The translations under genes and the position numbers were made by a program. DNA of 64,000 bases from Phyllobates terribilis (taxonomy: Eukaryota), in assembly GCF_046119375.1 (NCBI RefSeq), contig NW_027362773.1, positions 162,130,001 to 162,194,000 of the forward strand. Direction: 5' to 3'. Positions 13,701 through 64,000 of this stretch are shown one piece after another. Below the pieces are notes generated by a model, which saw only the letters and a program-made list of their open reading frames with translations, had not been told where the DNA came from and searched no databases. Position 1 is the first letter of the stretch; each line of letters starts with the position of its first letter.

Positions 13701-14490
13701 GTGCGCCGTCACCCGTGCGTGTATTATACGCGCGTGCCGTCTCCCGTGCGTGTATTATACGCGTGCGCCGTCACCTGTGCGTGTATTATACGCGTGTGCC
13801 GTCACCTGTGCGTGTATTATACGCGCGCGCCGTCACCCGTGCGTGTATTATACGCGTGCGCCGTCGCCCGTGTATTATACGCGCGCCGTCTCCTGTGCGT
13901 GTATTATACGCGCGTGCCGTCACCCGAGCGTGTATTATACGCGTGCGCCGTCGCCCGTGTATTATACGCGCGCGCCGTCTCCTGTGCGTGTATTATACGC
14001 GCGTGCCGTCACCCGTGCGTGTATTATACGCGTGCGCCGTCGCCCGTGTATTATACGCGCGCGCCGTCTCCTGTGCGTGTATTATACGCGCGTGCCGTCA
14101 CCCGTGCGTGTATTATACGCGTGCGCCGTCGCCCGTGTATTATACGCGCGCGCCGTCTCCTGTGCGTGTATTATACGCGCGTGCCGTCACCCGAGCGTGT
14201 ATTATACGCGTGCGCCGTCACCTGTGCGTGTATTATACGCGTGCGCCGTCACCCGTGCGTGTATTATACGCGCGCGCCGTCACCCGTGCGTGTATTATAC
14301 GCGTGCGCCGTCGCCCGTGTATTATACGCGTGTGCCGTCACCCGTGCGTGTATTATACGCGTGTGCCGTCACCCGAGCGTGTATTATACGCGTGCGCCGT
14401 CACCTGTGCGTGTATTATACGCGTGCGCCGTCACCCGTGCGTGTATTATACGCGTGTGCCGTCACCCGTGCGTGTATTATACGCGCGTGC
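10800..14490. repeat. CpG-rich ~27-31-bp satellite (ccgtcRcctgtgYgtgtattatacgcgYgYg), ~125 copies
   Basis: Period is 31 bp at the start (10806 to 10837); the unit is mostly alternating purine/pyrimidine. It produces the 1100-1270 aa pseudo-ORFs. Confidence 0.96.
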
Positions 14491-33046: not shown

Positions 33047-34072
33047 AGTTTATAATACGCCTGAGTTTCAAGTGCCTGGAGAGAAGCAAAAAGAAGTCTT
33101 ACTGACAGAATCCATGACTCGCAGTTATCAGCCAGTTCTCACCGACTTGTAAGAAGCTCTAGAACCATTTACCCAAGTCTGAATGGACTGAGCAGCTCTA
33201 TAGTGCAACCTCCACCTGTAAGGCACCCGGCGGGTATGAAAGGCAGGAGTCCAGGAGGAGGAGCCGGGTCCCTTCCCTTACACTCCAGAAAGGAGAAGAC
33301 CTGGAATGATTCTCTGCTGGAGCTCACACCGGGGTTAGGGGAGCACAATTATATAGATAAATGGGGTCCTATGGATGACCCCACGGTGCACCATTAGTAC
33401 CTGCCCCTCCCAGACACTCAGGTCACTGACTGGATAGTTGGGGGCCACACAAAAATCCAGAAGGGACCAAAAAACCCAATAAAAATGGTTCACTGAGATC
33501 TTCTCCCTGCAGGCTTGAAGCCTGAGGCTGCACTACTGGGGCTTCTGATGTCAGACACAAGGAAAACTGCAACTACTGAAGCCGCTTAGATATTGATGGA
33601 TCTGGTTCTCCGTGACAGCGCTGCGCCTGACATAGATCAGTAAGGTACACGCGGCAACCAGAACCTCACATCGGTGAGGCCGCCGGCTTCACACCGGGCT
33701 CCGTTCAGCATTCTGCATCGATGTATCTGAGCCATCAATAAAAAGAAGTAATAACATCCACCTCCTCAGGTCCAGGGCTGCGTCTCCGCTCGGTACCGGC
33801 TGCTTCGATTATTCTTAACACAAGTTCGCCAACATTGTGCAGAATGCTGGAAGGAGACGCTTCCCCTTTAAGTGATAACTAATAAGTATTCAAGATATTT
33901 TTTTAAAATTCCTCTAAGCAGCAAATCACTGGGGCAGAAATAAGCCGAACTTCAGGACGGACGGCCCTGGTGGGCGGAGGGGCAAATATCTATTCGAGAT
34001 TACAATAAAGGCACCAACAAGGCGCCACGTGGACCCCCACGATGGTAGTAGGCCACCATGACAAAAAACTAA

Positions 34073-34127
34073 ACTACAACTCCCAGCATGAAGTTAAAAG
34101 ATGGTAAAACTTGCTGGGAGTTGTAGT
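34073..34127. promoter_or_regulatory. Inverted pair of ZNF143/THAP11-type ACTACAA-TCCCAG motifs
   Basis: ACTACAACTCCCAGCATG (34073-34090, +) and TGCTGGGAGTTGTAGT (34112-34127, -). The same motif occurs at 24078 and 32342, so it may be MITE-borne. Confidence 0.5.
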
Positions 34128-34612
34128 TACGGTCTTGTCCCATTGGTGCAGCACATTACGCCCTCATATGTGACGGGTGCACAATACCAGAAGCCCGGTC
34201 ACCATCGCAGGGCGGGCACCAGTGTAAAACTCCCCACCAGCCATGGCCGGACCACTAGACCCCAGGATAATGGCGCCACGTGCAGTAATGGCCGTTTCTC
34301 CAGGAACAGCCGCCATTCTACAGTTACTGACTGCCAGAAGTGAAGGACAGCAGTGGGACGCCCCATGTCCAGCATTACACGAGGGGTCAGGCGGCTGATG
34401 CTGGAAAATATGTAAGAAGACAAAAAAAAAAAAAACACAGGAAGAGTCAGAGGGGAAAGTGTCGGAGTTTGTAGTCGGGTGACGTCATACACCTGGATGA
34501 TGGAGGAAAACGCCGAGTAATGGGCGGCTAGAACGTCACACCGGCCAGGACTGCACGGACAGATCCCAGGAAGGGACACAGCTGCATCTCCTCCCCCAGA
34601 AGCAGCACTCAC

Positions 34613-34700
34613 CGGCCCCGGAGATCTCCGCGCCTCCTCTCGCAGTCAGATACCGGAACGTTCTTGATCAGGAACCTTGAGCTCTGGATTCTACACCGGA
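34613..34700 (-). other. KBTBD4: Probable non-coding exon 1 of KBTBD4 (5' boundary approximate)
   Basis: Strong donor CCG|GTGAGT at 34613/34612 in a CpG-rich region; no ATG in the exon; 5' end not definable from sequence. Confidence 0.6.
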
Positions 34701-34789
34701 AGTTATCAGGAACGCTTTAGTGGGCGGACCGGTCAGGTTGTAGTGACTTCCGCTCTATTTCGCTTGCCCTTGTCTGTCCGTCAGGGAGA
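34640..34789. promoter_or_regulatory. Bidirectional KBTBD4/NDUFS3 promoter
   Basis: Head-to-head genes <200 bp apart; ETS/GABP cores CCGGAAC (~34653), CCGGAAGT (~34696) and ACTTCCG (~34746); GC box GGGCGG. Confidence 0.7.
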
Positions 34790-34838
34790 ATGATGCTGGC
34801 TGGAGTGCGGGCGGCGCAGCGGGGTCTGCTCCGGGGAG
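34790..34838 (+). CDS. NDUFS3: NDUFS3 exon 1 (mitochondrial targeting peptide start)
   Basis: MMLAGVRAAQRGLLRG G|gtgagg; 49 nt, phase 1; Arg-rich and free of acidic residues, like a presequence. Confidence 0.75.
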
Positions 34839-34914
34839 GTGAGGACTGGAATACACCGCCATATAGTGAGGGGAGGGGTAGTACTACAAGGCTCAGCACT
34901 GGCAGATCACTGGA

Positions 34915-36520
34915 GAGTCAGAATATGTAATGTATGTACACAGTGACTGCACCAGCAGAATAGTGAGTGCAGCTCTGGAGTATAATACAGGATGTAACTC
35001 AGGATCAGTAATGTAATGTATGTACACAGTGACTGCACCAGCAGAATAGTGAGTGCAGCTCTGGAGTATGATACAGGATGTAACTCAGGATCAGTAATGT
35101 AATGTATGTACACAGTGACTGCACCAGCAGAATAGTGAGTGCTGCTCTGGAGTATAATACAGGATGTAACTCTGGATCAGTAATATAATGTATGTACACA
35201 GTGACTGCACCAGCAGAATAGTGAGTGCAGCTCTGGGGTATAATACAGGATGTAACTCAGGATCAGTAATGTAATGTATGTACACAGTGACTGCACCAGC
35301 AGAATAGTGAGTGCAGCTCTTGAGTATAATACAGGAGGTAACTCAGGATCAGTAATGTAATGTATGTACACAGTGACTGCACCAGCAGAATAGTGAGTGC
35401 TGCTCTGGAGTATAATACAGGATGTAACTCTGGATCAGTAATATAATGTATGTACACAGTGACTGCACCAGCAGAATAGTGAGTGCAGCTCTGGGGTATA
35501 ATACAGGATGTAACTCAGGATCAGTAATGTAATGTATGTACACAGTGACTGCACCAGCAGAATAGTGAGTGCAGCTCTGGAGTATAATACAGGATGTAAC
35601 TCTGGATCAGTAATATAATGTATGTACACAGTGACTGCACCAGCAGAATAGTGAGTGCAGCTCTGGAGTATAATACAGGATGTAACTCTGGATCAGTAAT
35701 ATAATGTATGTACACAGTGACTGCACCAGCAGAATAGTGAGTGCAGCTCTGGGGTATAATACAGGAGGTAACTCAGGATCAGTAATGTAATGTATGTACA
35801 CAGTGACTACACCAGCAGAATAGTGAGCGCAGCTCTGGAGTATAATACAGGATGTAACTCAGGATCAGTAATGTAATGTATATACACAGTGACTGCACCA
35901 GCAGAATAGTGAGTGCAGCTCTGGAGTATAATACAGGAGGTAACTCAGGATCAGTAATGTAATGTATGTACACAGTGACTGCACCAGCAGAATAGTGAGT
36001 GCAGCTCTGGAGTATAATACAGGATTTAACTCAGGATCAGTAATGTAATGTATGTACATAGTGAGTGCAGCTCTGGAGTATAATACAGGATGTAACTCAG
36101 GATCAGTAATGTAATGTATGTACATAGTGAGTGCAGCTCTGGAGTATAATACAGGATGTAACTCAGGATCAGTAATGTAATGTATGTACACAGTGACTGC
36201 ACCAGCAGAATAGTGAGTGCAGCTCTGGAGGATAATACAGGATGTAACTCAGGATCAGTAATGTAATGTATATACACAGTGACTGCACCAGCAGAATAGT
36301 GAGTGCAGCTCTGGAGTATAATACAGGATGTAACTCCGGATCAGTAATGTAATGTATATACACAGTGACTGCACCAGCAGAATAGTGAGTGCAGCTCTGG
36401 AGTATAATACAGGATGTAACTCCGGATCAGTAATGTAATGTATGTACACAGTGTCTGCACCAGCAGAATAGTGAGTGCAGCTCTGGAGTATAATACAGGA
36501 TGTAACTCAGGATCAGTACA
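34915..36520. repeat. 86-bp tandem repeat, ~19 copies, in NDUFS3 intron 1
   Basis: gtgagtgcagctctggagtataatacaggatgtaactcaggatcagtaatgtaatgtatgtacacagtgactgcaccagcagaata (period 34991 to 35077). Confidence 0.96.
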
Positions 36521-36684
36521 GTATATATTATACACGTGTTGGCCACCCCCAGGCTGAGTTATATCTTTGCATATAATAGTGATGTGATTTGGGCAGAATC
36601 TTACATGTTGTTGTTCTTCTCTTCTTTCTGTGTTGCTGTTGTTGATGTTGTGAGATTGGTGGAGTCTGAAATACTTAGGATTAA

Positions 36685-37061
36685 AGGGGTATTCTCATCT
36701 CCAAGATCCTATCCCAATATGTAGAAGGTGTAATAATAATAATAATAATAATATTAGCAAATACCTCCAATTAGAAGTGTTGTATAGTTTTTCTGATTCA
36801 CTATGTCTCTTTCCTCATGTGCAGGTATCGCAGGACCTTAGGTATCCACGGTTACGACCACTAGCAACTAGCTAGCTAACTGTCACTTTATCAGTGGACT
36901 TAACCATGGATACCTAAGGTCCTGCAATGCCTGCACATGAGGAAAGCGACATGGTGAATCAGAAGAACTATACTACATTTCTACTTGGAGGTATTTGTTA
37001 ATATTATTATTATTACACCTACTACATATTGGGATAGGATGTTGGAGATGGGAAGACCCCT
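36685..37061. mobile_element. Palindromic T2/Kolobok-type MITE
   Basis: TTAA|AGGGGTATTCTCATCTCCAAGATCCTATCCCAATATGTAG pairs with CTACATATTGGGATAGGATGTTGGAGATGGGAAGACCCCT; the long internal arms are also complementary. Confidence 0.8.
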
Positions 37062-37250
37062 TTGCAGTTGACTCCTCCACTAGTTATTATGGGTCGAGAC
37101 CTCATTGATAGTGATAGCGGGGGGTGCATTTCCTGTGAGCGATCGCTGCGGCTCCGTTCTGGGTTGTGTGACTGAGGGGGGCAGCAGAGTCCCCCGTACC
37201 GGACCGGTTGCCTCCTGATAGCGCCGTTATTTCGCCTCTTTGTCTTGCAG

Positions 37251-37310
37251 CTTCCGTTCTCCGTGTGCTGACTCCGGTGCGATGCGAGGGCTCCGCCACA
37301 GAGACTAAAC
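37251..37310 (+). CDS. NDUFS3: NDUFS3 exon 2
   Basis: tgtcttgcag|(A)SVLRVLTPVRCEGSATETK(P)|gtacgt; 60 nt, phase 1-1, bridging exons 1 and 3 in frame. Confidence 0.75.
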
Positions 37311-37844
37311 GTACGTAATTACTATTATATTTATTTACAGCGGTAAAGGACCCGTGTGCTCTAAGTCTAGAGAGGATTCGGAGTTGCCTTTGCTTTTACA
37401 TGGGGCTGATAGTCTTAGTAATTAGTCGTCCCAGCTACGTCCTAGTGATCGTCTGCTTACCTGGGCCTGCCGTCCGCTGCGAGCTTTGCACCAACAGGAA
37501 ATGTTCTTTTGTTAACATTTGTAGACTCCTAAATTCATTCACACCAGATCACAACATTTATTAACACGCCAGGTCCCTCTTCTGAATTCCTGGTGACCCC
37601 TGATGTCCCCCAACCAGGCTGCTGAGATCAGACTGTGCTCAGACGTCAGACCAGTGCAAAGACCAGATAAAATAAAAGGAGAATTTAGACTTTACGCTGC
37701 TTGGTCCTCTTCTCTTCCAGGGGCCACCAAAGGCACCCTCCTGAAAATGCCCCCCTCATTATTTGCATTACTGTGTGACATATATGCTGCATGTCTCTGT
37801 CCAGGATATCAGCAGTTTCCCTCCTTACATGTTTTGCGTCTGTG

Positions 37845-40800
37845 AGGTATCCGGCTGCAGCAGGAGCCTCTCCCCTTCTCTGTCTGTAATCTTTCCGGCT
37901 GCAGCAGGAGCCTCTCCCCTTCTCTATCTATAATCTTTCCGGCTGCAGCAGGAGCCTCTCCCCTTCTCTATCTATAATCTTTCCAGCTGCAGCAGGAGCC
38001 TCTCCCCTTCTCTATCTATAATCTTTCCGGCTGCAGCAGGAGCCTCTCCCCTTCTCTATCTATAATCTTTCCGGCTGCAGCAGGAGCCTCTCCCCTTCTC
38101 TATCTATAATCTTTCCGGCTGCAGCAGGAGCCTCTCCCCTTCTCTATCTATAATCTTTCCGGCTGCAGCAGGAGCCTCTCCCCTTCTCTATCTACAATCT
38201 TTCCGGCTGCAGCAGGAGCCTCTCCCCTTCTCTATCTATAATCTTTCCAGCTGCAGCAGGAGCCTCTCCCCTTCTCTATCTATAATCTTTCCGGCTGCAG
38301 CAGGAGCCTCTCCCCTTCTCTATCTATAATCTTTCCGGCTGCAGCAGGGGCCTCTCCCCTTCTCTATCTATAATCTTTCCGGCTGCAGCAGGAGCCTCTC
38401 CCCTTCTCTATCTATAATCTTTCCGGCTGCAGCAGGAGCCTCTCCCCTTCTCTATCTATAATCTTTCCGGCTGCAGCAGGAGCCTCTCCCCTACTCTGTC
38501 TATAATCTTTCCGGCTTCAGCAGGAGCCTCTCCCCTTCTCTGTAATCTTTCCGGCTGCAGCAGGAGCCTCTCCCCTACTCTGTCTATAATCTTTCCGGCT
38601 GCAGCAGGAGCCTCTCCCCTTCTCTGTAATCTTTCCGGCTGCAGCAGGAGCCTCTCCCCTTCTCTGTAATCTTTCCGGCTGCAGCAGGAGCCTCTCCCCT
38701 ACTCTGTAATCTTTCTGGCTGCAGCAGGAGCCTCTCCCCTACTCTGTAATCTTTCTGGCTGCAGCAGGAGCCTCTCCCGTACTCTGTAATCTTTCTGGCT
38801 GCAGCAGGAGCCTCTCCCCTTCTCTGTAATCTTTCCTTCTGCAGCAGGAGCCTCTCCCCTACTCTGTAATCTTTCCGGCTGCAGCAGGAGCCTCTCCCCT
38901 TCTCTGTAATCTTTCCTTCTGCAGCAGGAGCCTCTCTCCTACTCTGTAATCTTTCCGGCTGCAGCAGGAGCCTCTCCCCTACTCTGTAATCTTTCCGGCT
39001 GCAGCAGGAGCCTCTCCCCTTCTCTGTAATCTTTCCGGCTGCAGCAGGAGCCTCTCCCCTACTCTGTAATCTTTCCGGCTGCAGCAGGAGCCTCTCCCCT
39101 TCTCTGTAATCTTTCCGGCTGCAGCAGGAGCCTCTCCCCTTCTCTGTAATCTTTCCGGCTGCAGCAGGAGCCTCTCCCCTTCTCTGTAATCTTTCCGGCT
39201 GCAGCAGGAGCCTCTCTCCTACTCTGTAATCTTTCCGGCTGCAGCAGGAGCCTCTCCCCTTCTCTATCTGTAATCTTTCCGGCTGCAGCAGGAGCCTCTC
39301 CCCTTCTCTATCTATAATCTTTCCGGCTGCAGCAGGAGCCTCTCCCCTTCTTTGTAATCTTTCCGGCTTCAGCAGGAGCCTCTCCCCTTCTCTGTAATCT
39401 TTCCGGCTGCAGCAGGAGCCTCTCCCCTACTCTGTCTATAATCTTTCCGGCTGCAGCAGGAGCCTCTCCCCTTCTCTGTAATCTTTCCGGCTGCAGCAGG
39501 AGCCTTTCCCCTTCTCTGTCTATAATCTTTCCGGCTGCAGCAGGAGCCTCTCCCCTTCTCTGTAATCTTTCTGGCTGCAGCAGGAGCCTCTCCTCTACTC
39601 TGTAATCTTTCTGGCTGCAGCAGGAGCCTCTCCTCTACTCTGTAATCTTTCTGGCTGCAGCAGGAGCCTCTCCCGTACTCTGTAATCTTTCTGGCTGCAG
39701 CAGGAGCCTCTCCCCTACTCTGTAATCTTTCTGGCTGCAGCAGGAGCCTCTCCCCTACTCTGTAATCTTTCTGGCTGCAGCAGGAGCCTCTCCCGTACTC
39801 TGTAATCTTTCTGGCTGCAGCAGGAGCCTCTCCTCTACTCTGTAATCTTTCTGGCTGCAGCAGGAGCCTCTCCTCTACTCTGTAATCTTTCTGGCTGCAG
39901 CAGGAGCCTCTCCCCTTCTCTGTAATCTTTCTGGCTGCAGCAGGAGCCTCTCCCCTACTCTGTAATCTTTCTGGCTGCAGCAGGAGCCTCTCCCGTACTC
40001 TGTAATCTTTCTGGCTGCAGCAGGAGCCTCTCCCCTTCTCTGTAATCTTTCCTTCTGCAGCAGGAGCCTCTCCCCTACTCTGTAATCTTTCCGGCTGCAG
40101 CAGGAGCCTCTCCCCTTCTCTGTAATCTTTCCTTCTGCAGCAGGAGCCTCTCCCCTACTCTGTAATCTTTCCGGCTGCAGCAGGAGCCTCTCCCCTACTC
40201 TGTAATCTTTCCGGCTGCAGCAGGATCCTCTCCCCTTCTCTGTAATCTTTCCGGCTGCAGCAGGAGCCTCTCCCCTTCTCTGTAATCTTTCCGGCTGCAG
40301 CAGGAGCCTCTCCCCTACTCTGTAATCTTTCCGGCTGCAGCAGGAGCCTCTCCCCTTCTCTGTAATCTTTCCGGCTGCAGCAGGAGCCTCTCCCCTTCTC
40401 TGTAATCTTTCCGGCTGCAGCAGGAGCCTCTCCCCTTCTCTGTAATCTTTCCGGCTGCAGCAGGAGCCTCTCCCCTTCTCTGTAATCTTTCCGGCTGCAG
40501 CAGGAGCCTCTCCCCTTCTCTGTAATCTTTCCGGCTTCAGCAGGAGCCTCTCCCCTTCTCTGTAATCTTTCCGGCTGCAGCAGGAGCCTCTCCCCTACTC
40601 TGTAATCTTTCCGGCTGCAGCAGGAGCCTCTCCCCTTCTCTGTAATCTTTCCGGCTGCAGCAGGAGCCTCTCCCCTTCTCTGTAATCTTTCCGGCTGCAG
40701 CAGGAGCCTCTCCCCTTCTCTGTAATCTTTCCGGCTGCAGCAGGAGCCTCTCTCCTACTCTGTAATCTTTCCGGCTGCAGCAGGAGCCTCTCCCCTTCTC

Positions 40801-43800
40801 TATCTGTAATCTTTCCGGCTGCAGCAGGAGCCTCTCCCCTTCTCTATCTATAATCTTTCCGGCTGCAGCAGGAGCCTCTCCCCTTCTTTGTAATCTTTCC
40901 GGCTTCAGCAGGAGCCTCTCCCCTTCTCTGTAATCTTTCCGGCTGCAGCAGGAGCCTCTCCCCTACTCTGTCTATAATCTTTCCGGCTGCAGCAGGAGCC
41001 TCTCCCCTTCTCTGTAATCTTTCCGGCTGCAGCAGGAGCCTTTCCCCTTCTCTGTCTATAATCTTTCCGGCTGCAGCAGGAGCCTCTCCCCTTCTCTGTA
41101 ATCTTTCTGGCTGCAGCAGGAGCCTCTCCTCTACTCTGTAATCTTTCTGGCTGCAGCAGGAGCCTCTCCTCTACTCTGTAATCTTTCTGGCTGCAGCAGG
41201 AGCCTCTCCCGTACTCTGTAATCTTTCTGGCTGCAGCAGGAGCCTCTCCCCTACTCTGTAATCTTTCTGGCTGCAGCAGGAGCCTCTCCCGTACTCTGTA
41301 ATCTTTCTGGCTGCAGCAGGAGCCTCTCCCGTACTCTGTAATCTTTCTGGCTGCAGCAGGAGCCTCTCCTCTACTCTGTAATCTTTCTGGCTGCAGCAGG
41401 AGCCTCTCCTCTACTCTGTAATCTTTCTGGCTGCAGCAGGAGCCTCTCCCCTTCTCTGTAATCTTTCTGGCTGCAGCAGGAGCCTCTCCCCTACTCTGTA
41501 ATCTTTCTGGCTGCAGCAGGAGCCTCTCCCGTACTCTGTAATCTTTCTGGCTGCAGCAGGAGCCTCTCCCCTTCTCTGTAATCTTTCCTTCTGCAGCAGG
41601 AGCCTCTCCCCTACTCTGTAATCTTTCCGGCTGCAGCAGGAGCCTCTCCCCTTCTCTGTAATCTTTCCGGCTGCAGCAGGAGCCTCTCCCCTTCTCTGTA
41701 ATCTTTCCGGCTGCAGCAGGAGCCTCTCCCCTTCTCTGTAATCTTTCCGGCTGCAGCAGGAGCCTCTCCCCTTCTCTGTAATCTTTCCGGCTGCAGCAGG
41801 AGCCTCTCCCCTTCTCTGTAATCTTTCCGGCTGCAGCAGGAGCCTCTCCCCTTCTCTGTAATCTTTCCGGCTTCAGCAGGAGCCTCTCCCCTTCTCTGTA
41901 ATCTTTCCGGCTGCAGCAGGAGCCTCTCCCCTACTCTGTCTATAATCTTTCCGGCTGCAGCAGGAGCCTCTCCCCTTCTCCGTAATCTTTCCGGCTGCAG
42001 CAGGAGCCTCTCCCCTTCTCTGTAATCTTTCTGGCTGCAGCAGGAGCCTCTCCCCTACTCTGTAATCTTTCTGGCTGCAGCAGGAGCCTCTCCCGTACTC
42101 TGTAATCTTTCTGGCTGCAGCAGGAGCCTCTCCCCTTCTCTGTAATCTTTCCGGCTGCAGCAGGAGCCTCTCCCCTTCTCTGTAAACTTTCCGGCTGCAG
42201 CAGGAGCCTCTCCCCTTCTCTGTAATCTTTCCGGCTGCAGCAGGAGCCTCTCCCCTACTCTGTAATCTTTCTGGCTGCAGCAGGAGCCTCTCCCCTACTC
42301 TGTAATCTTTCTGGCTGCAGCAGGAGCCTCTCCCCTTCTCTGTAATCTTTCCGGCTGCAGCAGGAGCCTCTCCCCTTCTCTGTAATCTTTCCGGCTGCAG
42401 CAGGAGCTTCTCCCCTACTCTGTAATCTTTCTGGCTGCAGCAGGAGCCTCTCCCCTACTCTGTAATCTTTCTGGCTGCAGCAGGAGCCTCTCCCCTACTC
42501 TGTAATCTTTCTGGCTGCAGCAGGAGCCTCTCCCCTACTCTGTAATCTTTCTGGCTGCAGCAGGAGCCTCTCCCCTTCTCTGTAATCTTTCCGGCTGCAG
42601 CAGGAGCCTCTCCCCTTCTCTGTAATTTTTCCGGCTGCAGCAGGAGCCTCTCCCCTACTCTGTAATCTTTCTGGCTGCAGCAGGAGCCTCTCCCCTACTC
42701 TGTAATCTTTCCTTCTGCAGCAGGAGCCTCTCCCCTACTCTGTAATCTTTCCGGCTGCAGCAGGAGCCTCTCCCCTTCTCTGTAATCTTTCCTTCTGCAG
42801 CAGGAGCCTTTCCCCTTCTCTGTCTATAATCTTTCCGGCTGCAGCAGGAGCCTCTCCCCTTCTCTGTAATCTTTCCGGCTTCAGCAGGAGCCTCTCCCCT
42901 TCTCTGTAATCTTTCCGGCTGCAGCAGGGGCCTCTCCCCTTCTCTGTAATCTTTCCTTCTGCAGCAGGAGCCTCTCCCCTACTCTGTAATCTTTCCGGCT
43001 GCAGCAGGAGCCTCTCCCCTACTCTGTAATCTTTCCGGCTGCAGCAGGATCCTCTCCCCTTCTCTGTAATCTTTCCGGCTGCAGCAGGAGCCTCTCCCCT
43101 TCTCTGTAATCTTTCCTTCTGCAGCAGGAGCCTCTCCCCTACTCTGTAATCTTTCCGGCTGCAGCAGGAGCCTCTCCCCTACTCTGTAATCTTTCCTTCT
43201 GCAGCAGGAGCCTCTCCCCTTCTCTGTAATCTTTCCGGCTGCAGCAGGAGCCTCTCCCCTTCTCTGTAATCTTTCCTTCTGCAGCAGGAGCCTCTCCCCT
43301 ACTCTGTAATCTTTCCGGCTGCAGCAGGAGCCTCTCCCCTACTCTGTAATCTTTCCGGCTGCAGCAGGAGCCTCTCCCCTTCTCTGTAATCTTTCCGGCT
43401 GCAGCAGGAGCCTCTCCCCTTCTCTGTAATCTTTCCGGCTGCAGCAGGAGCCTCTCCCCTACTTTGTAATCTTTCCAGCTGCAGCAGGAGCCTCTCCCCT
43501 TCTCTGTAATCTTTCCGGCTGCAGCAGGAGCCTCTCCCCTTCTCTGTAATCTTTCCGGCTGCAGCAGGAGCCTCTCCCCTTCTCTGTAATCTTTCCGGCT
43601 GCAGCAGGAGCCTCTCCCCTTCTCTGTAATCTTTCTGTCTGCAGCAGGAGCCTCTCCCCTACTCTGTAATCTTTCCGGCTGCAGCAGGAGCCTCTCCCCT
43701 TCTCTGTAATCTTTCCGGCTGCAGCAGGAGCCTCTCCCCTACTCTGTAATCTTTCCGGCTGCAGCAGGAGCCTCTCCCCTTCTCTGTAATCTTTCTATCT

Positions 43801-44352
43801 GCAGCAGGAGCCTCTCTCCTCTACTCTGTAATCTTTCTAGCTGCAGCAGGAGCCTCTCTCCTACTCTGTAATCTTTCCGGCTGCAGCAGGAGCCTCTCCT
43901 CTACTCTGTAATCTTTCCGGCTGCAGCAGGAGCCTCTCCCCTTCTCTGTAATCTTTCTATCTGCAGCAGGAGCCTCTCTCCTCTACTCTGTAATCTTTCT
44001 AGCTGCAGCAGGAGCCTCTCTCCTACTCTGTAATCTTTCCGGCTGCAGCAGGAGCCTCTCCCCTACTCTGTAATCTTTCCGGCTGCAGCAGGAGCCTCTC
44101 CCCTTCTCTGTAATCTTTCCGGCTGCAGCAGGAGCCTCTCCCCTACTCTGTAATCTTTCCGGCTGCAGCAGGAGCCTCTCCTCTACTCTGTAATCTTTCC
44201 GGCTGCAGCAGGAGCCTCTCCCCTTCTCTGTAATCTTTCCGGCTGCAGCAGGAGCCTCTCCTCTTCTCTGTAATCTTTCCGGCTGCAGCAGGAGCCTCTC
44301 CCCTTCTCTGTAATCTTTCCGGCTGCAGCAGGAGCCTCTCCTCTACTCTGTG
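37845..44352. repeat. 40-bp (initially 46-bp) satellite, ~160 copies, in NDUFS3 intron 2
   Basis: ctgcagcaggagcctctccccttctctgtaatctttccgg; ends ~35 nt before the exon 3 acceptor. Confidence 0.97.
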
Positions 44353-44387
44353 ATCTTAGCCATGTTTCACCCTGCTTTGTGTTGCAG

Positions 44388-44485
44388 CGACGGTTCGTCC
44401 GGTGGATACTGCTCTACAGAATCACCTCAGCGCATTCGGCGAGTACGTGGCAGAAATTCTTCCCAAGTACGTGCAGCAGGTTCAG
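44388..44485 (+). CDS. NDUFS3: NDUFS3 exon 3
   Basis: gttgcag|(P)[32 protein letters not shown]|gtgagt; 98 nt, phase 1-0. Confidence 0.96.
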
Positions 44486-44984
44486 GTGAGTTATCGGCCG
44501 TGGTCTCTGTGCACTGGGGCGAGTGCTGCTCTTCACAATTCCTGCAGACTTCACACCTTCACACACTGGAGGCCTCCGATCTCTGCACACGTGGTGCGGG
44601 GAGCCGCTATATCTACAGCTCCAGTGTTACAGTTTGCATTTCCCGCTGTTGTGCATTAGTATTGTAGATCCTCGATCCCTCCAATCCTTGTATTTACAGA
44701 ATATCTACCTAATATATGACATAATTACTGATTATTGGTCACCTAGAGTCCGGCAATGCTGTCCTGCTCCAGGGGCACAGATCCAGTCCACTGCCGTAGT
44801 GTTAGGATAGGTCATTAATGTCTGATTATGGGGTTAGACACTCAGAAATGTTTGCAGCTCTTCCCACGGACGCATGTACTCAGCGTCCAGAGCTCGGACA
44901 CCTCACCTCTGCGCACAGCATAGGAAATGAGTGTTGTAATCCTGAACAACCACTTAATCAATATTTGTGTCCAACTGCTCATAG

Positions 44985-46692
44985 AGCAGAGGGGCGAGGC
45001 TCCTGCTGCAGACAGTTGTCTTACGGCCACACAGAGGGGAGAGGCTCCTGCTGCAGACAGTTGTCTTACGGCCACACAGAGGGGAGAGGCTCCTGCTGCA
45101 GACAGTTGTCTTACGGCCACACAGAGGGGAGAGGCTCCTGCTGCAGACAGTTGTCTTACAGCCACACACAGGACAGAGGGGGGAGGCTCCTGCTGCAGCC
45201 AGTTGTCTTACAGCTACACACAGGACAGAGGAAGGAGGCTCCTGCTGCAGGCAGTTGTCTTACAGCCACACACAGGACAGAGGGGGGAGGCTCCTGCTGC
45301 AGGCAGTTGTCTTACAGCCACACACAGGACAGAGGGGGAGGCTCCTGCTGCAGACAGTTGTCTTACAGCCACACACAGGACAGAGGGGGGAGGCTCTTGC
45401 TGCAGGCAGTTGTCTTACAGCCACACACAGGACAGAGGGGGAGGCTCCTGCTGCAGACAGTTGTCTTACAGCCACACACAGGACAGAGGGGGGAGGCTCC
45501 TGCTGCAGACAGTTGTCTTACAGCCACACACAGGACAGAGGGGGGGAAGCTCCTGCTGCAGGCAGTTGTCTTACAGACACACAGAGGGGGGAGGCTCTTG
45601 CTGCAGGCAGTTGTCTTACAGCCACACACAGGACAGAGGGGGGAGGCTCCTGCTGCCAACAGTTGTCTTACAGACACACACAGGACAGAGGGGGGAGGCT
45701 CCTGCTGCCAACAGTTGTCTTACAGCCACACACAGGACAGAGGGGAGAGGCTGCTGTTGCAGACTGTTGTCTTACAGCCACACACAGGACAGAGGGGGGG
45801 AGGCTCCTGCTGCAGACAGTTGTCTTACAGCCACACACAGGACAGAGGGGGGGGGGCTCCTGCTGCAGACAGTTGTCTTACAGCCACACACAGGACAGAG
45901 GGGGGGAGGCTCCTGCTGCAGGCAGTTGTCTTACAGCCACACACATGACAGAGGGGGGAGGCTCCTGCTGCAGGCTGTTGTCTTACAGCCACACACAGGA
46001 CAGAGGGGAGGGGGCTCCTGCTGCAGACAGTTGTCTTACAGCCACACACAGGACGGAGGGGGGAGGCTCCTGCTGCAGGTAGTTGTCTTACAACCACACA
46101 CAGGACAAAGGGGGGGGGGGGGCTCCTGCTGCAGACAGATGTCATACAGCCACACACAGGACAGAGGGGGGAGGCTCCTGCTGCAGACAGTTGTCTTACA
46201 GCCACACACAGGACAGAGGGGGGGAGGCTCCTGCTGCAGACAGTTGTCTTACAGCCACACACAGCACAGAGGGGGGGAGGCTCCTGCTGCAGACAGTTGT
46301 CTTACAGCCACACACAGGACAGAGGGGGGGAAGCTCCTGCTGCAGGCAGTTGTCTTACAGCCACACACAGGACAGAGAGGGGAGGCTCCTGCTGCAGCCA
46401 GTTGTCTTACAGCCACACACAGGACAAAGGGGGGGGGGGCTCCTGCTGCAGGTAGTTGTCTTACAACCACACACAGGACAAAGGGGGGGGGGGGGCTCCT
46501 GCTGCAGACAGATGTCATACAGCCACACACAGGACAGAGGGGGGAGGCTCCTGCTGCAGGCAGTTGTCTTACAGCCACACACAGGACAGAGGGGGGAGGC
46601 TCCTGCTGCAGGCAGTTGTCTTACAGCCATACACAGGACAGAGGGGGGGAGGCTCCTGCTGCAGACAGTTGTCTTACAGCCACACACAGGAC
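44985..46692. repeat. 45-53-bp satellite, ~33 copies, in NDUFS3 intron 3
   Basis: gggggaggctcctgctgcagacagttgtcttacagccacacacaggacaga. Confidence 0.96.
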
Positions 46693-47137
46693 ACTGCGGA
46701 GGACATGGCTGAACTCCTTACTGGAAAGTCTGCTTACATTGGGAGGAATTGTTTTTTTGGTTATTGTTTCTGCCTTTTGGAAAGCCCCTGTATAAGCTGC
46801 TTATGGCTGAAGACGCTGATACCCTGCGATTTCCCTGCTGCCATCAGTTCTGTGATCTGTCGCAGATTTCTGTTTCTTGGTTGCCAGCAATGATGTGGCG
46901 TGATCAGCATGTGACAACGGCCCCAGGCACTAACTGCAAAGGTGACTTTCATGTCCAGCTGGGAACCGCGGCGGTCAGTGACTGTCTGCGGCGGTCACGG
47001 GTCTATATGCAGCTTATAAGGAGGATCCCCAAAGTCCAGGAAACCATTTAATGACAGTGATTGTCTGCAGCGCTGCTCACCTCCTGCCCATGGGCTGCTT
47101 TACCCTCCGTCTCTCTTCTGCCGGTTTTCTCTCGTAG

Positions 47138-47287
47138 GTCACGTGCTTTGGAGAATTGGAGATTATGATCCATCCTGATGGCGTCGTCCCCGTCCTCACG
47201 TTCCTCCGCGATCACACAAATGCTCAGTTTAAGTCACTGGCAGATCTGACCGCTGTGGACGTCCCGACCCGACAGAACCGCTTCGAG
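47138..47287 (+). CDS. NDUFS3: NDUFS3 exon 4
   Basis: ctcgtag|[50 protein letters not shown]|gtgagc; 150 nt. Confidence 0.97.
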
Positions 47288-47534
47288 GTGAGCGCCGCAG
47301 TCTCCGCCGCTACACACCTGATGCGGGAGTTACGATTGCGCCATTTCTGACCGTTGGGCCGGCGTCCACATCCCATAGGCGGATCGGCCATACTGAGACA
47401 CAGACTGATCTCCCTGACGCTCCCTCAGTCGTCTTATTCTTATTGAAGAGCATCACAGTCAGTCTCTCTCCAGCCAAAAATGGCTGATAACAGGGGGCAG
47501 TAGATTATATATAACTGAACTGTAAGAGTACGGA

Positions 47535-47708
47535 GCCGGTGCTGCGCCATCGCACGCGGACGGCTCCGGTGGTGCGCCATCGCACGCGGACGTCGCCGGT
47601 GCTGCGCCATCGCACGCGGACGTCGCCGGTGCTGCTTCATCACACGCGGACGTCGCCGGTGCTGCTTCATCACACGCGGACGTCGCCGGTGCTGCTTCAT
47701 CACACGCG
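47535..47708. repeat. 30-bp minisatellite, ~6 copies
   Basis: gccggtgctgcKYcatcRcacgcggacgtc. Confidence 0.9.
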
Positions 47709-47751
47709 TCCGATAGATTAACCCATTCCACACCTTCTACTTTTCTTCCAG

Positions 47752-47877
47752 ATTGTCTACAACTTGCTGTCCTTGCAGTTTAACTCCCGGATCCGTGTGA
47801 AGACTTACGCAGATGAGCTCACTCCCATAGACTCCATTGAGCCCGTCCATAAAGCTGCAAACTGGTATGAGAGGGAG
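47752..47877 (+). CDS. NDUFS3: NDUFS3 exon 5
   Basis: ttcttccag|[42 protein letters not shown]|gtgagc; 126 nt. Confidence 0.97.
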
Positions 47878-48498
47878 GTGAGCGTCCGCTGAGCGCGCGG
47901 CTGTGTGCACTCGTGCGATACGTGATAACGAGTCACGTCGGATCACAGTCCTGATATATTGAGGATGGTGCCGTCCCCCCGCGCTCATTCCACACATGGA
48001 CGCCCGTCCAGCCGTGTGCAGCGCTTCTCGCTGGAAATTTATGGATTGTGATCAGTGAACAGCAGGGGTGTGATCGGCTGATTCCACCATAAACTGATGA
48101 TCAGCGCGACGCCGGCGTGAATGGTTATAGATGAAGCAGGGGCGTCATGTATGCACCCACTAGGACCCCACAGATCCTGAGCGTGGTACCCTGGAGGAAG
48201 GTCCTCTGTTTTATCATGAAGGTCTGGACTCTCCTTTTGTTATGAATAATGGCGCCTCTACAGACATCTTTTTTTTTTTGCAGCAGAAATCCGCTGCAGC
48301 CGGTAAGTAAATGTCAGACGCACCATAGGTTTTCATATGGTTCTTCAGATGCAATATGCTCTAGGGGCTTTTTTATGCATTTATCCAAATGCAAAAAAAA
48401 CCCCCCCAAAAATACAAATGTGCACCAAAAAAAAATCTGGAAATAAAACCAGAAAACCTATTTCAATTTGCTTATCGCAGTCCTGTCTGATGTCTTAG

Positions 48499-48744
<246 letters not shown>

Positions 48745-48987
48745 TAGGGCCGCAGTATTGGATAGTGATATCGTATTTCTGGCTTTGCTGTTACTTTGTG
48801 ATCGCTGGGGGTCCTATCTCTGGGTCTTCCACCGATCCCGAGCTCTCCCTTCTCTTCAGCGCTCTCAGCCGCCCGTCAGTGCAGGGAAATCCTGCCGCCT
48901 CATTTACCTCCTGTTACATCAAGGGGTCTGAAACGCCCCTCTGCTGGGGGAGAGCTGTGGAGGTCCCTGGGGTCAGACCCCCACATA

Positions 48988-50491
48988 CAGTGGGTACGGA
49001 AAGTATTCAGACCCCTTTACATTTTTCACTCTTTGTTTCATTGCAGCCATTTGGTAAATTCTAAAAAGTTCATTTTTTTCTCCTTACAGTACACTCTGCA
49101 CCCCATCTTGACTGAAAAAAAAACAGAAATGTAGAAATTTTTGCAAATTTATTAAAGAAAAACTGAAATATCCCATGGTCATAAGTATTCAGACCCTTTG
49201 CTCGGTATTGAGTAGAAGCCCCCTTTTGAGCTAGTACAGCCATGAGTCTTCTTGGGAATGATGCAACAAGTTTTTCACCCCTGGATTTGGGGGTCCTCGG
49301 CCATTCTTCCTTGCAGATCCTCTCCAGTTCCGTCAGGTTGGATGGTGAACGTTGGTGGACAGCCATTTTCAGGTCTCTCCAGAGATGCTCAATTGGGTTT
49401 CGGTCAGGGCTCTGGCTGGGCCAGTCAAGAATGGTCACAGAGTTGTTCTGAAGCCACTCCTTTGTTATTTTAGCTGTCTGCTTAGGGTCATTGTCTTGTT
49501 GGAAGGTGAACCTTCGGCCAAGTCTGAGGTCCAGAGCACTCTGGAAGAGGTTTTCATCCAGGATATCTCTGTACTTGGCCGCATTCATGTTTCCTTCAAT
49601 TGCAACCAGTCGTCCTGTCCCTGTAGCTGAAAAACACCCCCATAGCATGATGCTGCCACCACCATGTTTCACTGTTGGGATTGTATTAGGCAGGTGATGA
49701 GCAATGCCTGGTTTTCTCCACACATACAGCTTAGAATTATCACCAAAAAGTTCTATCTTCGTCTCATCAGAGCAGAGAATCTTATTTCTCATAGTCGGGG
49801 AGTCCGTCATGTGTTTTTGAGCAAACTCTATGCGAGCTTTCATATGTCTTGCACTGAGGAGAGGCTTCCATCAGGCCACTCTGCCATAAAGGCCCGACTG
49901 GTGGAGGGCTGCAGTGATAGTTGACTTTGTGGAACTTTCTCCCATCTTCCTACTGCATCTCTGGAGCTCAGCCACAGTGATCTTGGGGTTCTTCTTTACC
50001 TCTCTCACCAAGGCTCTTCTCCCACGATTGCTCAGTTTGGCTGGACGACCAGGTCTAGGAAGACTTCTGGAGGTCCCAAACTTCTTCCCTTTAAGGATTA
50101 TGGAGGCCACTGTGCTCTTAGGAACCTTGAGTAATGCAGAAATTCTTTTGTAACCTTGGCCAGATCTGTGCCTTGCCACAGTTCTGTCTCTGAGCTCCTT
50201 GGGCAGTTCCTTTGAGCTCATGATTCTCATTTGGTCTGACATGCACTGTGAGCTGTGAGGTCTTATATAGACAGGTGTGCGCCTTTCCAAATCAAGTCCT
50301 ATCAGTTTAATTAATCACAGCTGAACTCCAATGAAGGAGTAGAACCATCTCAAGGAGGATCACAAGGAAATGGACAGCATGTGACTTAAATATGAGTGTC
50401 TGAGCAAAGGGTCTGAATACTTATGACCATGTGAGATTTAATTTTTTCTTTTTTAATAAGAGTGAAAAATGTAAAGGGGTCTGAATACTTT
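48988..50491 (-). mobile_element. Near full-length IR/DR Tc1 element (DD34E transposase, 342 codons, disabled) in NDUFS3 intron 6
   Basis: TA|CAGTGGGTACGGAAAGTATTCAGACCCC left end; ~210-bp inverted repeats with internal direct repeats; single frame 50230 to 49202 with GRPAK, SDETK, QDND-(34)-E; in-frame TGA at 49871-49873. Confidence 0.96.
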
Positions 50492-50512
50492 GCAATGTCA
50501 TGTCCTTCCCAG

Positions 50513-50677
50513 GTTCGTTATGATGACGAGGTGAAGCGCGTGGTGGCAGAGCCGGTGCAGTTGGCCCAAGAGTTCAGAAAGTTTGACTTGAGCAGCCCAT
50601 GGGAGGCCTTCCCAGCCCACCGGGAGGCGCAAGAGAGCCCGAAGCTGGAGGCAGGAGAAACGAAGGAAGCAAAGTGA
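50513..50677 (+). CDS. NDUFS3: NDUFS3 exon 7 (to stop)
   Basis: ccttcccag|[34 protein letters not shown]...EAK*; total ORF 255 aa. Confidence 0.97.
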
Positions 50678-50732
50678 GGCCAGCGCTGACGTGAGGACGT
50701 CCGGAGCCCCGAAACTATATTTATGTACATAG

Positions 50733-50738
50733 AATAAA
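50733..50738 (+). terminator. NDUFS3: NDUFS3 polyadenylation signal AATAAA
   Basis: AATAAA 55 nt after the stop codon. Confidence 0.7.
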
Positions 50739-52700
50739 GATCTGACGTCTTGGAGAAGCGTAGGAGGTTTGGTGTCTTCTCTTGTCCTTGCTCTTCTGAA
50801 CCTTCTGCCTCTTGGTTTTTAGCTTTAATTTGTTCATATTGTTGAGTTTTTCCCATTGACATGAATAGGACCCTTCATTTAGTTGCGTGACCTATCACAT
50901 GACTAAATGACGTCATGGCAGGTCCTTTCACACCACCGCAACACATACAACGGACCGGGGGCCATCAGAAGGTAAGTATAATCTTTATTTTTTATTATTT
51001 TTTTTCTTTTTTCTTTTTTTTTTTTTTTTTACGGTTAACTTGGTCACACTATATATGCCGGTTGCCGGTTGCATGGATTTATATAGTGTGACCAAGTTAT
51101 CAAGCACTTTCCAAGTGATGCTAAAATCACTTGGAAAGCGCTTGATAACCCGCATGCAAAAACGCTTGACAAACGCTTCTACCTGGCGGGAAAAACACAT
51201 GTAAAATCCGCATGCGTTTTTCCTGCCAGAGAGAAGCGGAAAAAATCTGCATCATTTCTGCATCGTGGGCACATAGCCTTAGGCAGAGCAGACTACACGT
51301 CCATATGCTGAAAAGAAAACCGGTCAATGCAAACTGACCCAGCATGGGCCAAAAACTAGTCTGTAATGTATGTATGTGGTCTTATGTTTGTATGGACATG
51401 TGCATGTTTACAAAATGATTTGTGAATGGAGCCTTAAGGGGAGGTTGTCTGGCGTCTTAGACATTGATGGCTTATCCTAAGGAAAGGTCATTAGTATCAG
51501 ATCGGTGGGTCCAACCCTCGGCCCTGCAGCGATCCGCAGGCGTAGACTATGTGCGGAGCCCCACACATGGCGTAGAGGCCTATCCCGGTACTACAGCTCG
51601 GCCTCTATTCACAGCAGGACCCAGGGGTCTGATTGATGGGTAGAAAACTAGGTCAATTTGTGAAACCTTTCTGTATGAGTTCAAGGGTTTATTAGAGCCG
51701 ATGACAGTACGACCCCTCGCAGCAGCCAGACGAGGCATGCACCATACCTGCCGACCATGCAGGTCCGCAGGGTCATCACATCATGGTCCAGGATGGCGCT
51801 CGATGACCCCTTTAGACACGGCTTCTATCCCCTGGAATTGGTGGCACTTACAGATCGGCCACCGTCACTGAGCGGGACCCTTGCACTGGAGCGGCGCTGT
51901 TTCTGGAGGATCGCAGCCTTGGTTTACGTGTCTCGTCGCGTCCCTTCTGGATGCACTTGTGCTGCATTTGGGGGACCAGATGCCGTTTCGGTCCAGGGTT
52001 TGAATCTTAATTTCAGGACAGGGATTGAGAATAGCGGCGACCGGCGACGTACGAAGCGCAGAATCGACTTCTCCTTTCTTGAATCCTCTAGTTGAGGCAT
52101 AAAATCAGCTCATGTACAAGCTCCCAAATCCCCCCCCCAGAAAACCCCCAATTATCGCAGCACCTGCAAAACTTGTGTCAGTGGCTCACAATCCGCCACC
52201 CTCTGTCTGTGCCGCCCGCTGATGGAATAGAAGGGCTCGTTAGCAGATTTAATTAACCGCTGGCATCGGGAACGATCGCTCCCGCAGGACGCAGCTCCGT
52301 ATAATCGCTCATATTTGCATAAACATTCACCAGTAATGACATTTATAATTGCCAAACACATGGGAAATAGAAAATGATTTTATTCCCCTCTTATCCCCCG
52401 CCAGGTAGTGTAACGTACGGCACGTTCTGCGTATCTTACACCTGTCCTATGTCAGGACGACCGGCCGCCTCTTACGCTCCTTATAAGACGACTACGGACA
52501 CTGGGAAGGTTGCCCACTCCACTCATGCACTACACGGATCTAGAACATGCCCGCCGACACTCAAGATGAACTGCGAATGACAACTGTATGAATGGAGACA
52601 CAGGCCGATGTCTGATTACTGGTCCTATCAATGGAATCACAAGTGGATTTAAGGAGTAACGCCATAAAAATAGTGGAAATGTGGGTGAAACTGCATTTAA

Positions 52701-63600: not shown

Positions 63601-64000
63601 TATAAATCTGTATGTAGTGAGCTCCCCCTAGTGGTGGCTGTATAAATCTGTATGTACTGAGCTCCCTCTAGTGGTGACTGTATAAATCTGTATGTAGTGA
63701 GCTCCCCCTAGTGGTGACTGTATAAATCTGTATGTAGGGAGCTCCCTCTAGTGGTGACTGTATAAATCTGTATGTAGGGAGCTCCCTCTAGTAGTGACTG
63801 TATAAATCTCTATGTAGTGAGCTCCCCCTAGTGTTGGCTGTATAAATCTCTATGTAGTGAACTCCCCCTAGTGTTGGCTGTATAAATCTGTATGTAGTGA
63901 GCTCCCCCTAGTGGTGGCTGTATAAATCTGTTTGTAGTGAGCTCCCCCTAGTGGTGGCTGTATAAATCTATAGCCAGTGAGCTCCCTCTAGTGGTGGCTG
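57700..64000. repeat. 40-bp satellite, ~155 copies, runs off the window end
   Basis: gtagtgagctcccYctagtggtgRctgtataaatctgtat. Confidence 0.97.

What the first reader, a model, noticed from the sequence alone, without database searches (positions are those of the whole stretch)
37845..46692. NDUFS3 exon 3 is bracketed by two satellites with complementary cores
The upstream unit core CTGCAGCAGGAGCCTCTCCCC (~160 copies) is the exact reverse complement of GGGGAGAGGCTCCTGCTGCAG in the downstream array (e.g. 45036-45056); most of its ~33 units match 16 nt exactly and ~20 nt with a G-U pair. In the pre-mRNA this allows many ~20-bp helices that loop out the 98-nt exon, the geometry that promotes exon skipping, back-splicing or ADAR editing. 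Skipping would frameshift an essential complex I subunit. The two otherwise different arrays probably expanded independently from the same seed motif in opposite orientations.
Basis: partly seen in the sequence, partly recalled or inferred. Interest (0 to 1): 0.7.

Follow-up and report, generated by a model that had tools for sequence, protein, structure and literature searches.

The report
Inverted minisatellites flanking frog NDUFS3 exon
Two tandem repeats of one family sit in opposite orientation on either side of a small essential exon of a frog complex I gene and could pair strongly in the RNA, but the assembled RNA I could inspect splices the exon in normally, so this looks like a tolerated by-product of a repeat-prone genome.

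Summary
Array A (37850-44357) has about 160 units of 40/44 nt. Array B (44987-46693) has 33 units of 45-56 nt. They bracket a 98-nt exon (44388-44485) that encodes the start of mature NDUFS3. Their cores are reverse complements, and among 91 array pairs in the window only this pair shares a long word (26 nt, next best 13).

The arrays are not "otherwise different". 31 of the 40 positions of the A unit align with the 45-nt B unit, so they are diverged inverted copies of one minisatellite family.

In silico the pairing is strong: about -56 kcal/mol per unit pair, z = -11, and 281 A:B pairs for ten units a side. It loops out the exon with both splice sites. Skipping would shift the frame.

Assembled RNA contigs from four studies (the window's species and two relatives) all join exon 2, exon 3 and exon 4 exactly, with no back-splice contig. 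Contigs cannot show rare forms, so low-level skipping, circles and editing remain untested. The core of array B is no better conserved than the rest of its unit.

Unchecked notes of this scan report inverted copies of one minisatellite on other DNA of this genome: around SLC25A27 exon 6 and around the endou/cyb5r3 promoter.

Verdict: a real and tidy structure, probably neutral.

The parts
34790..34838 (+). NDUFS3 exon 1, coding part (ATG at 34790, donor gtgagg at 34839); inferred
   Evidence: Read from the sequence. It opens with a presequence-like peptide, MMLAGVRAAQRGLLRG, and its phase fits exon 2. No RNA evidence was obtained for this junction.
37251..37310 (+). NDUFS3 exon 2 (60 nt)
   Evidence: Splice sites were read. 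The loose ends of RNA contigs before exon 3 equal 37281-37310 exactly.
37850..44357 (+). Array A: about 160 units of 40/44 nt. It is C/U-rich on the sense strand, fills 92% of intron 2 and ends 30 nt before the 3' splice site of exon 3.
44388..44485 (+). NDUFS3 exon 3 (98 nt; [32 protein letters not shown])
   Evidence: Contigs in four runs cover it with exact borders.
44486..44986 (+). Unique first 501 nt of intron 3, lying between exon 3 and array B
   Evidence: Low-depth contigs cover it in run X19, at about 1% of the exon contig's depth figure.
44987..46693 (+). Array B: 33 units. Four of the 32 measured unit lengths are 45 nt (the first three units and one further in); the rest are 51-56 nt. 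The sense strand carries G runs and the reverse complement of the A core. It fills 64% of intron 3.
47138..47287 (+). NDUFS3 exon 4 (150 nt)
   Evidence: PF00329 profile positions 1-41. The loose ends behind exon 3 equal 47140-47169.
47752..47877 (+). NDUFS3 exon 5 (126 nt)
   Evidence: PF00329 profile positions 42-85.
48499..48618 (+). NDUFS3 exon 6 (120 nt)
   Evidence: PF00329 profile positions 86-123.
50513..50674 (+). NDUFS3 exon 7, coding part up to the stop (end coordinate approximate)
   Evidence: The peptide [33 protein letters not shown]... is followed by a stop.

Best explanation
Arrays A and B are two diverged local expansions of one minisatellite family. They lie in opposite orientation in introns 2 and 3 of a frog NDUFS3 gene, in a genome whose introns are full of such arrays. 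In the pre-mRNA they could zip into a long interrupted duplex that loops out exon 3. In the cell the exon is nevertheless defined and spliced normally. Three inferred reasons are that splicing is co-transcriptional, that the C/U-rich A units and G-run B units are probably coated by proteins, and that helicases act on such RNA. On this reading the pair is a tolerated, probably neutral by-product, and it gives at most minor amounts of skipped (NMD-targeted) or circular RNA. Shown: the anatomy, the homology, the in-silico pairing and the normal exon 2-3-4 joins in assembled RNA. Inferred: why the duplex does not disturb splicing, and neutrality.
For: The arrays and their inverted homology are real. 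RNA contigs from four studies and three organism labels join exon 2 to exon 3 to exon 4 exactly and show no other joint. In array B the 16-nt core varies as much as the rest of the unit (0.040 vs 0.036 and 0.021 vs 0.021). In array A the lower core variation reflects a few polymorphic sites outside the core. No compensatory changes were seen. About 40% of the window is minisatellite, and introns 1 to 4 of this gene are 66%, 92%, 64% and 37% tandem repeat. Unchecked scan notes describe many other array-filled introns in this genome that are spliced exactly, and other inverted pairs of one minisatellite. In reporter plasmids, G-U wobbles and over-stable hairpins can inhibit circularisation, and thermodynamics alone does not predict it (PMC4201285).
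Against: The predicted pairing is very strong and sits where it should matter. A unit pair gives -55 to -57 kcal/mol, against -26.5 for A:A and -35.9 for B:B. The 951-nt local fold has z = -11.1, and the inter-array helices survive in the centroid. Ten units a side gain about -261 kcal/mol over separate folding, with 281 A:B pairs. The last helix lies within about 45 nt of the 3' splice site. In human data, exons looped out by stable complementary regions have lower inclusion and such arrangements are depleted (PMC8052449). 30-40 nt inverted repeats suffice for circles in reporters (PMC4201285). My RNA evidence is contigs only, and contigs drop rare forms and cannot quantify.
Confidence: 0.7

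Rival explanations
1. The A:B duplex does form on a sizeable share of pre-mRNAs and gives measurable by-products: a 98-nt exon 3 circle, an exon 2-4 transcript removed by NMD, or ADAR-edited intronic dsRNA. These arise as a non-adaptive side effect that lowers NDUFS3 output somewhat.
For: The thermodynamics and geometry favour it. The repeat length and position are within what suffices for circularisation in reporters (PMC4201285). Looped-out exons are included less, and complementary regions are enriched in editing sites (PMC8052449). Skipping gives a premature stop, so it would be hidden in steady-state poly(A) assemblies.
Against: None of the four runs has a contig with a back-splice or any other joint at the exon. 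From general knowledge, a 98-nt exon is short for a single-exon circle. Most B units need a G-U pair, which can inhibit circularisation. Array A is transcribed minutes before array B and can be bound or folded first (inference).
Confidence: 0.2
2. The pair is a selected regulatory device, for example a structure-dependent and possibly temperature-sensitive switch that tunes complex I output in an ectotherm through exon 3 skipping plus NMD.
For: Only the suggestive geometry in an essential gene.
Against: There is no sign of constraint on the complementary core in array B and no compensatory changes. Similar inverted and direct array pairs are reported elsewhere in this genome in unrelated genes (unchecked notes). 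The dominant RNA is the normal one.
Confidence: 0.04
3. The relevant level is DNA, not RNA. On this view the inverted arrays matter as a fragile or recombination-prone inverted repeat around exon 3, or as protein-binding arrays in chromatin.
For: There are inverted arrays with up to 26 nt of uninterrupted identity, 630 bp apart. Other arrays of this genome were noted as CTCF-like (unchecked).
Against: From general knowledge, 26 nt is far below the usual length needed for homologous recombination. By eye the core matches only about 10 of 14 positions of the CTCF consensus and lacks its GGC triplet; I recalled this from memory and did not score it. The gene is intact.
Confidence: 0.05

Closest known systems
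Inverted intronic repeats that drive exon circularisation (Alu pairs at ZKSCAN1, HIPK3, EPHB4; the long inverted repeats at mouse Sry), PMC4201285
   Same: Complementary sequences lie in the two introns flanking an exon and close to its splice sites, and their pairing would bring the downstream 5' splice site next to the upstream 3' splice site.
   Different: Here the arms are two minisatellites (160 and 33 units), so pairing is multivalent: many 22-29-bp helices separated by internal loops, not one SINE-length helix. The exon is only 98 nt. No back-spliced RNA has been seen.
Exon loop-outs by long-range complementary regions (PCCRs; Kalmykova et al. 2021, PMC8052449)
   Same: A stable intronic duplex encloses a whole exon, a configuration linked with lower inclusion in human data.
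   Different: PCCRs are defined by evolutionary conservation. These arrays are fast-evolving repeats with no sign of constraint, and the exon appears constitutive in the assembled RNA.
Other array-filled introns of this same frog genome (scan notes s1-224834, s1-224826, s1-198934, s1-238380, s1-196806; unchecked)
   Same: Local expansions of minisatellites fill introns next to exons, sometimes with the same family on both sides of an exon or promoter and sometimes inverted. Splicing was reported as normal where it was examined.
   Different: I could not show that this family is dispersed.

Membership tests
Minisatellite (tandem repeat with a unit of about 10-100 nt) | Head-to-tail copies of a 10-100-nt unit | tested here: met
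   TRF: 40 nt x 160 copies at 94% matches, and 52 nt x 30 copies at 91% matches.
NDUFS3 / Complex1_30kDa gene | Exons encode the 30-kDa subunit domain in order | tested here: met
   Exons 4, 5 and 6 match PF00329 profile positions 1-41, 42-85 and 86-123. The exon 3 peptide matches NDUFS3 chains at E about 3e-9. The joined protein was not searched.
circRNA locus driven by flanking inverted repeats | Reverse-complementary sequences in both flanking introns, near the splice sites | tested here: met
   In the folds the helices start within about 45 nt of the 3' splice site and about 500 nt after the 5' splice site.
circRNA locus driven by flanking inverted repeats | A back-spliced junction exists in RNA | tested here: inconclusive
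   No 'go back' joint in the contigs of four runs. Contigs drop rare and circular forms, and no raw reads or RNase R data were on hand.
circRNA locus driven by flanking inverted repeats | The repeats base-pair in vivo | not testable with these tools
   Only thermodynamic prediction is available.
Exon loop-out that causes skipping | Reduced inclusion of the enclosed exon | tested here: inconclusive
   The dominant contigs in all four runs include the exon. The exon 2-to-4 junction could not be looked for, because exons 2 and 4 are 10 kb apart and the stretch limit is 6 kb.
Exon loop-out that causes skipping | Complementarity kept by selection (conservation, compensatory changes) | tested here: not met
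   The core is no less variable than the rest of the unit in array B, and there are no compensatory variants. Cross-species comparison of the arrays was not possible.
ADAR substrate (long intronic dsRNA) | A-to-G differences clustered in the paired regions | not tested
The 629-nt unique stretch shows no such differences in the window's own species.

The most novel reading that the evidence does not exclude
The two arrays form a multivalent RNA zipper of up to 33 helices whose stability, and hence exon 3 skipping plus NMD or production of a 98-nt circle, varies with temperature or tissue. That would give an ectotherm a structure-based dial on complex I assembly.
Probability: 0.05. Interest if true: 0.7.

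Novelty: new member of a known kind. Interest (0 to 1): 0.3.

Why it matters
If the duplex forms in vivo, this would be a natural, highly multivalent test case for how far intronic complementarity can go before it disturbs a constitutive, frame-critical exon of an essential gene. It would also bear on how cells with satellite-laden introns keep splicing accurate. As it stands, it mainly documents that a very strong predicted exon loop-out is compatible with normal splicing of the dominant mRNA. That is a useful caution against reading function from complementarity alone.

Tried and rejected
- **Transposon remnants or inverted homology in the flanks.** I ran blastn of 36519-37849, 44358-44986 and 46694-47700 against the window. 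It found nothing beyond a small local 30-nt repeat.
- **Solo or degenerate copies of either unit elsewhere in the window.** Only chance matches of 12 nt or fewer turned up (one search failed without an answer).
- **Origin from the exon 3 junction, as in other arrays of this genome.** The only shared strings are a 9-nt TGCAGCAGG and TCTCTGT, seen by eye and not significant.
- **Rfam on 34000-51500.** No family matched.
- **Exact 22-mer core in metagenome contigs.** No hit.
- **Full-text search for the core as a string.** Only unrelated primers came back.
- **Papers on NDUFS3 circRNA and on poison-frog intronic tandem repeats.** Nothing specific.
- **CTCF-like reading of the core.** About 10 of 14 consensus positions by eye and from memory, without the GGC triplet. 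I did not score it and did not adopt it.
- **Assembly artefact (fold-back chimera).** Rejected, because the two arrays have different unit lengths and different spacer sequence.
- The joined spliced NDUFS3 model was not built or searched; exons were searched one by one by reference. The arrays themselves were kept out of read laying from the start, because the tool says it turns away long repeats.
Full report
**What is there**

The window is a frog sequence that is very rich in minisatellites. TRF lists 14 separate arrays covering roughly 40% of the 64 kb. Other agents' notes call the species the golden poison frog; I did not check that.

NDUFS3 lies on the + strand, and I derived its model piece by piece.
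- Exon 1 has its ATG at 34790 and its donor at 34839. It was read from the sequence and is inferred.
- Exon 2 is 37251-37310.
- Exon 3 is 44388-44485, 98 nt.
- Exon 4 is 47138-47287, exon 5 is 47752-47877 and exon 6 is 48499-48618.
- Exon 7 runs from 50513 to the stop.

Exons 4 to 6 match Pfam PF00329 (Complex1_30kDa) in consecutive profile segments. The exon 3 peptide matches the N-terminus of mature NDUFS3 in many solved complex I structures at E about 3e-9.

**The observation**

Array A (37850-44357) has about 160 units, 131 of 40 nt and 26 of 44 nt. It fills 92% of the 7077-nt intron 2 and stops 30 nt before the 3' splice site of exon 3. Array B (44987-46693) has 33 units. Four of the 32 measured unit lengths are 45 nt (the first three units and one further in); the rest are 51-56 nt. 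It fills 64% of the 2652-nt intron 3 and starts 501 nt after the 5' splice site.

Of the B units, 21 of 33 give 16 or more contiguous Watson-Crick pairs with the A consensus, 3 give 22, and 27 give 20 or more with G-U allowed.

As a control I compared all 91 pairs of arrays in the window. The longest shared exact word is 26 nt for A/B inverted, 13 for the next pair and 11 or fewer for the rest.

**How the two arrays relate**

Aligning the reverse complement of the A unit with the 45-nt B unit gives 31 identical positions out of 40. These are the 22-nt core, ACAGAG and TTAC. A 9-nt block is unrelated and B has a few extra bases. The 52-nt B unit is the 45-nt unit with a short internal duplication.

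So these are diverged copies of one minisatellite family in opposite orientation, not two unrelated arrays that share a seed. I found no transposon remnants, no target-site duplications, no inverted homology in the flanks and no solo copies. How the family came to lie on both sides of the exon therefore stays open. Possible routes are two insertions, re-integration of a circle excised from one array, or a local inverted event.

**Could the RNA pair?**

In silico it pairs very well.
- One A unit against one B unit gives -55 to -57 kcal/mol, compared with -26.5 for A:A and -35.9 for B:B.
- The 951 nt from 44200 to 45150 fold to -414 kcal/mol, against -321 +/- 8 for shuffles (z = -11.1). Four inter-array helices are also kept in the centroid.
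- Ten units a side plus the middle fold to -742 kcal/mol, against -482 for the three parts folded apart. That fold has 281 A:B pairs and no A:A pairs.
- The loop of about 640 nt holds the branch region, both splice sites and the exon.

Leaving exon 3 out shifts the frame. The exon 4 frame that would follow exon 2 meets a stop after 12 codons.

**What the RNA shows**

The one run search returned only runs kept as contigs, with their kind guessed as RNA. I laid four of them on the 629 unique bases 44358-44986: X1 and X19 from organism A in two studies, X5 from organism B and X6 from organism C. I left the arrays out on purpose because the tool says it turns away long repeats.

In all four runs a high-depth contig covers 44388-44487.
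- Its overhang before 44388 ends in ...GAGACTAAAC. In organism A that overhang is exactly 37281-37310, the end of exon 2.
- Its overhang behind 44487 is exactly 47140-47169 in organism A, which is exon 4 from its third base. The first two bases, GT, coincide with the intron's own GT.
- The relatives show the same joins with 8-9 differences per 100 nt.
- No joints of any kind were listed, so no back-splice contig was found.
- The unique part of intron 3 is covered in X19 by contigs with about 1% of the exon contig's depth figure.

The dominant mRNA therefore contains exons 2-3-4, and it uses the authentic 3' splice site even though about 160 splice-acceptor-like motifs lie just upstream. Contigs cannot count molecules and they drop rare variants. 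The exon 2-to-4 junction also could not be sought, because the two exons lie 10 kb apart and the stretch limit is 6 kb. Skipping, circles and editing at low level are thus untested, not excluded.

**Selection**

In array B the 16-nt core is as variable as the rest of the unit (0.040 vs 0.036 for 52-nt units; 0.021 vs 0.021 for 53-nt units). In array A the difference (0.013 vs 0.054) comes from two or three polymorphic sites that define unit subtypes. No compensatory changes were seen. Nothing points to maintenance of the complementarity.

**Context**

Introns 1 to 4 of this gene are 66%, 92%, 64% and 37% tandem repeat. Unchecked scan notes report many array-filled introns in this genome that are spliced exactly. 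They also report the same family on both sides of SARS2 exon 2 (direct), inverted copies of one minisatellite around SLC25A27 exon 6, and inverted copies around the endou/cyb5r3 promoter. An inverted pair is thus what one expects now and then when one family seeds arrays in neighbouring introns.

**Comparison with what is known**

The geometry is that of inverted-repeat-driven circRNA loci. In those, 30-40 nt of complementarity next to the splice sites is sufficient in reporters. G-U wobbles and over-stable hairpins can inhibit, and 'more than simple thermodynamics' decides the outcome (PMC4201285). It is also the geometry of exon loop-outs, which in human data go with lower inclusion and are depleted (PMC8052449).

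The first defining feature, flanking inverted complementarity, is met. The product features (a back-splice junction, lowered inclusion, editing) are not shown. I therefore say it is built like such loci and do not file it as a working one.

**Verdict**

The structure is real and unusually neat, with a strong predicted exon loop-out in an essential gene. The best-supported reading, at about 0.7, is a tolerated neutral pair of inverted minisatellites with normal splicing. A sizeable by-product (circle, skipped NMD form, editing) gets about 0.2, a selected device about 0.04 and a DNA-level role about 0.05.

Noticed in passing
window 37850-44357: Each A unit reads, on the sense strand, as a C/U-rich tract followed by GGCUGCAG|CAG, which looks like a 3' splice site with a polypyrimidine tract. 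About 160 such motifs lie directly upstream of the real acceptor at 44387. The same tracts (UCUCU, CUUCUCU) look like PTB-type binding sites, and the B units carry G6-G13 runs of the hnRNP H/F type. Contigs show only the authentic acceptor in use. The motifs were not scored.
   Followed up: partly
window 34839-37250, 47288-47751: Intron 1 of NDUFS3 is 66% an 86-nt-unit array (34925-36518) that starts 87 nt after the exon 1 donor. Intron 4 holds a 30-nt x 5.8 array (47535-47708). With arrays A and B, the first four introns of the gene all carry minisatellites.
   Followed up: no
window 34690-34760: Two ETS/GABP (NRF-2)-like motifs, CCGGAAGT and ACTTCCGC, lie in opposite orientation 30-100 nt upstream of the NDUFS3 ATG. 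From general knowledge this is typical of promoters of nuclear respiratory genes. It is probably the promoter region shared with KBTBD4.
   Followed up: no
window 44802-44833: A 32-nt piece of intron 3 matches contigs of depth 119-136 in X1 and X19 that run on into unlike sequence on both sides. It is probably a fragment of a repeat or of another expressed transcript.
   Followed up: no
window 44390: In X1 a low-depth contig (depth 6.2, against 1700 for the main one) reads C instead of A at the third base of exon 3. That would change Thr to Pro. It is probably an error or a rare allele, and it is not an A-to-G change.
   Followed up: no
window 1-2668, 5499-9408, 10800-14487, 57708-64000: There are further large arrays: 13-nt x 205, 66-nt x 59, 31-nt x 120 and 40-nt x 157 (the last runs off the window end). 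None shares more than 13 nt with any other array.
   Followed up: partly
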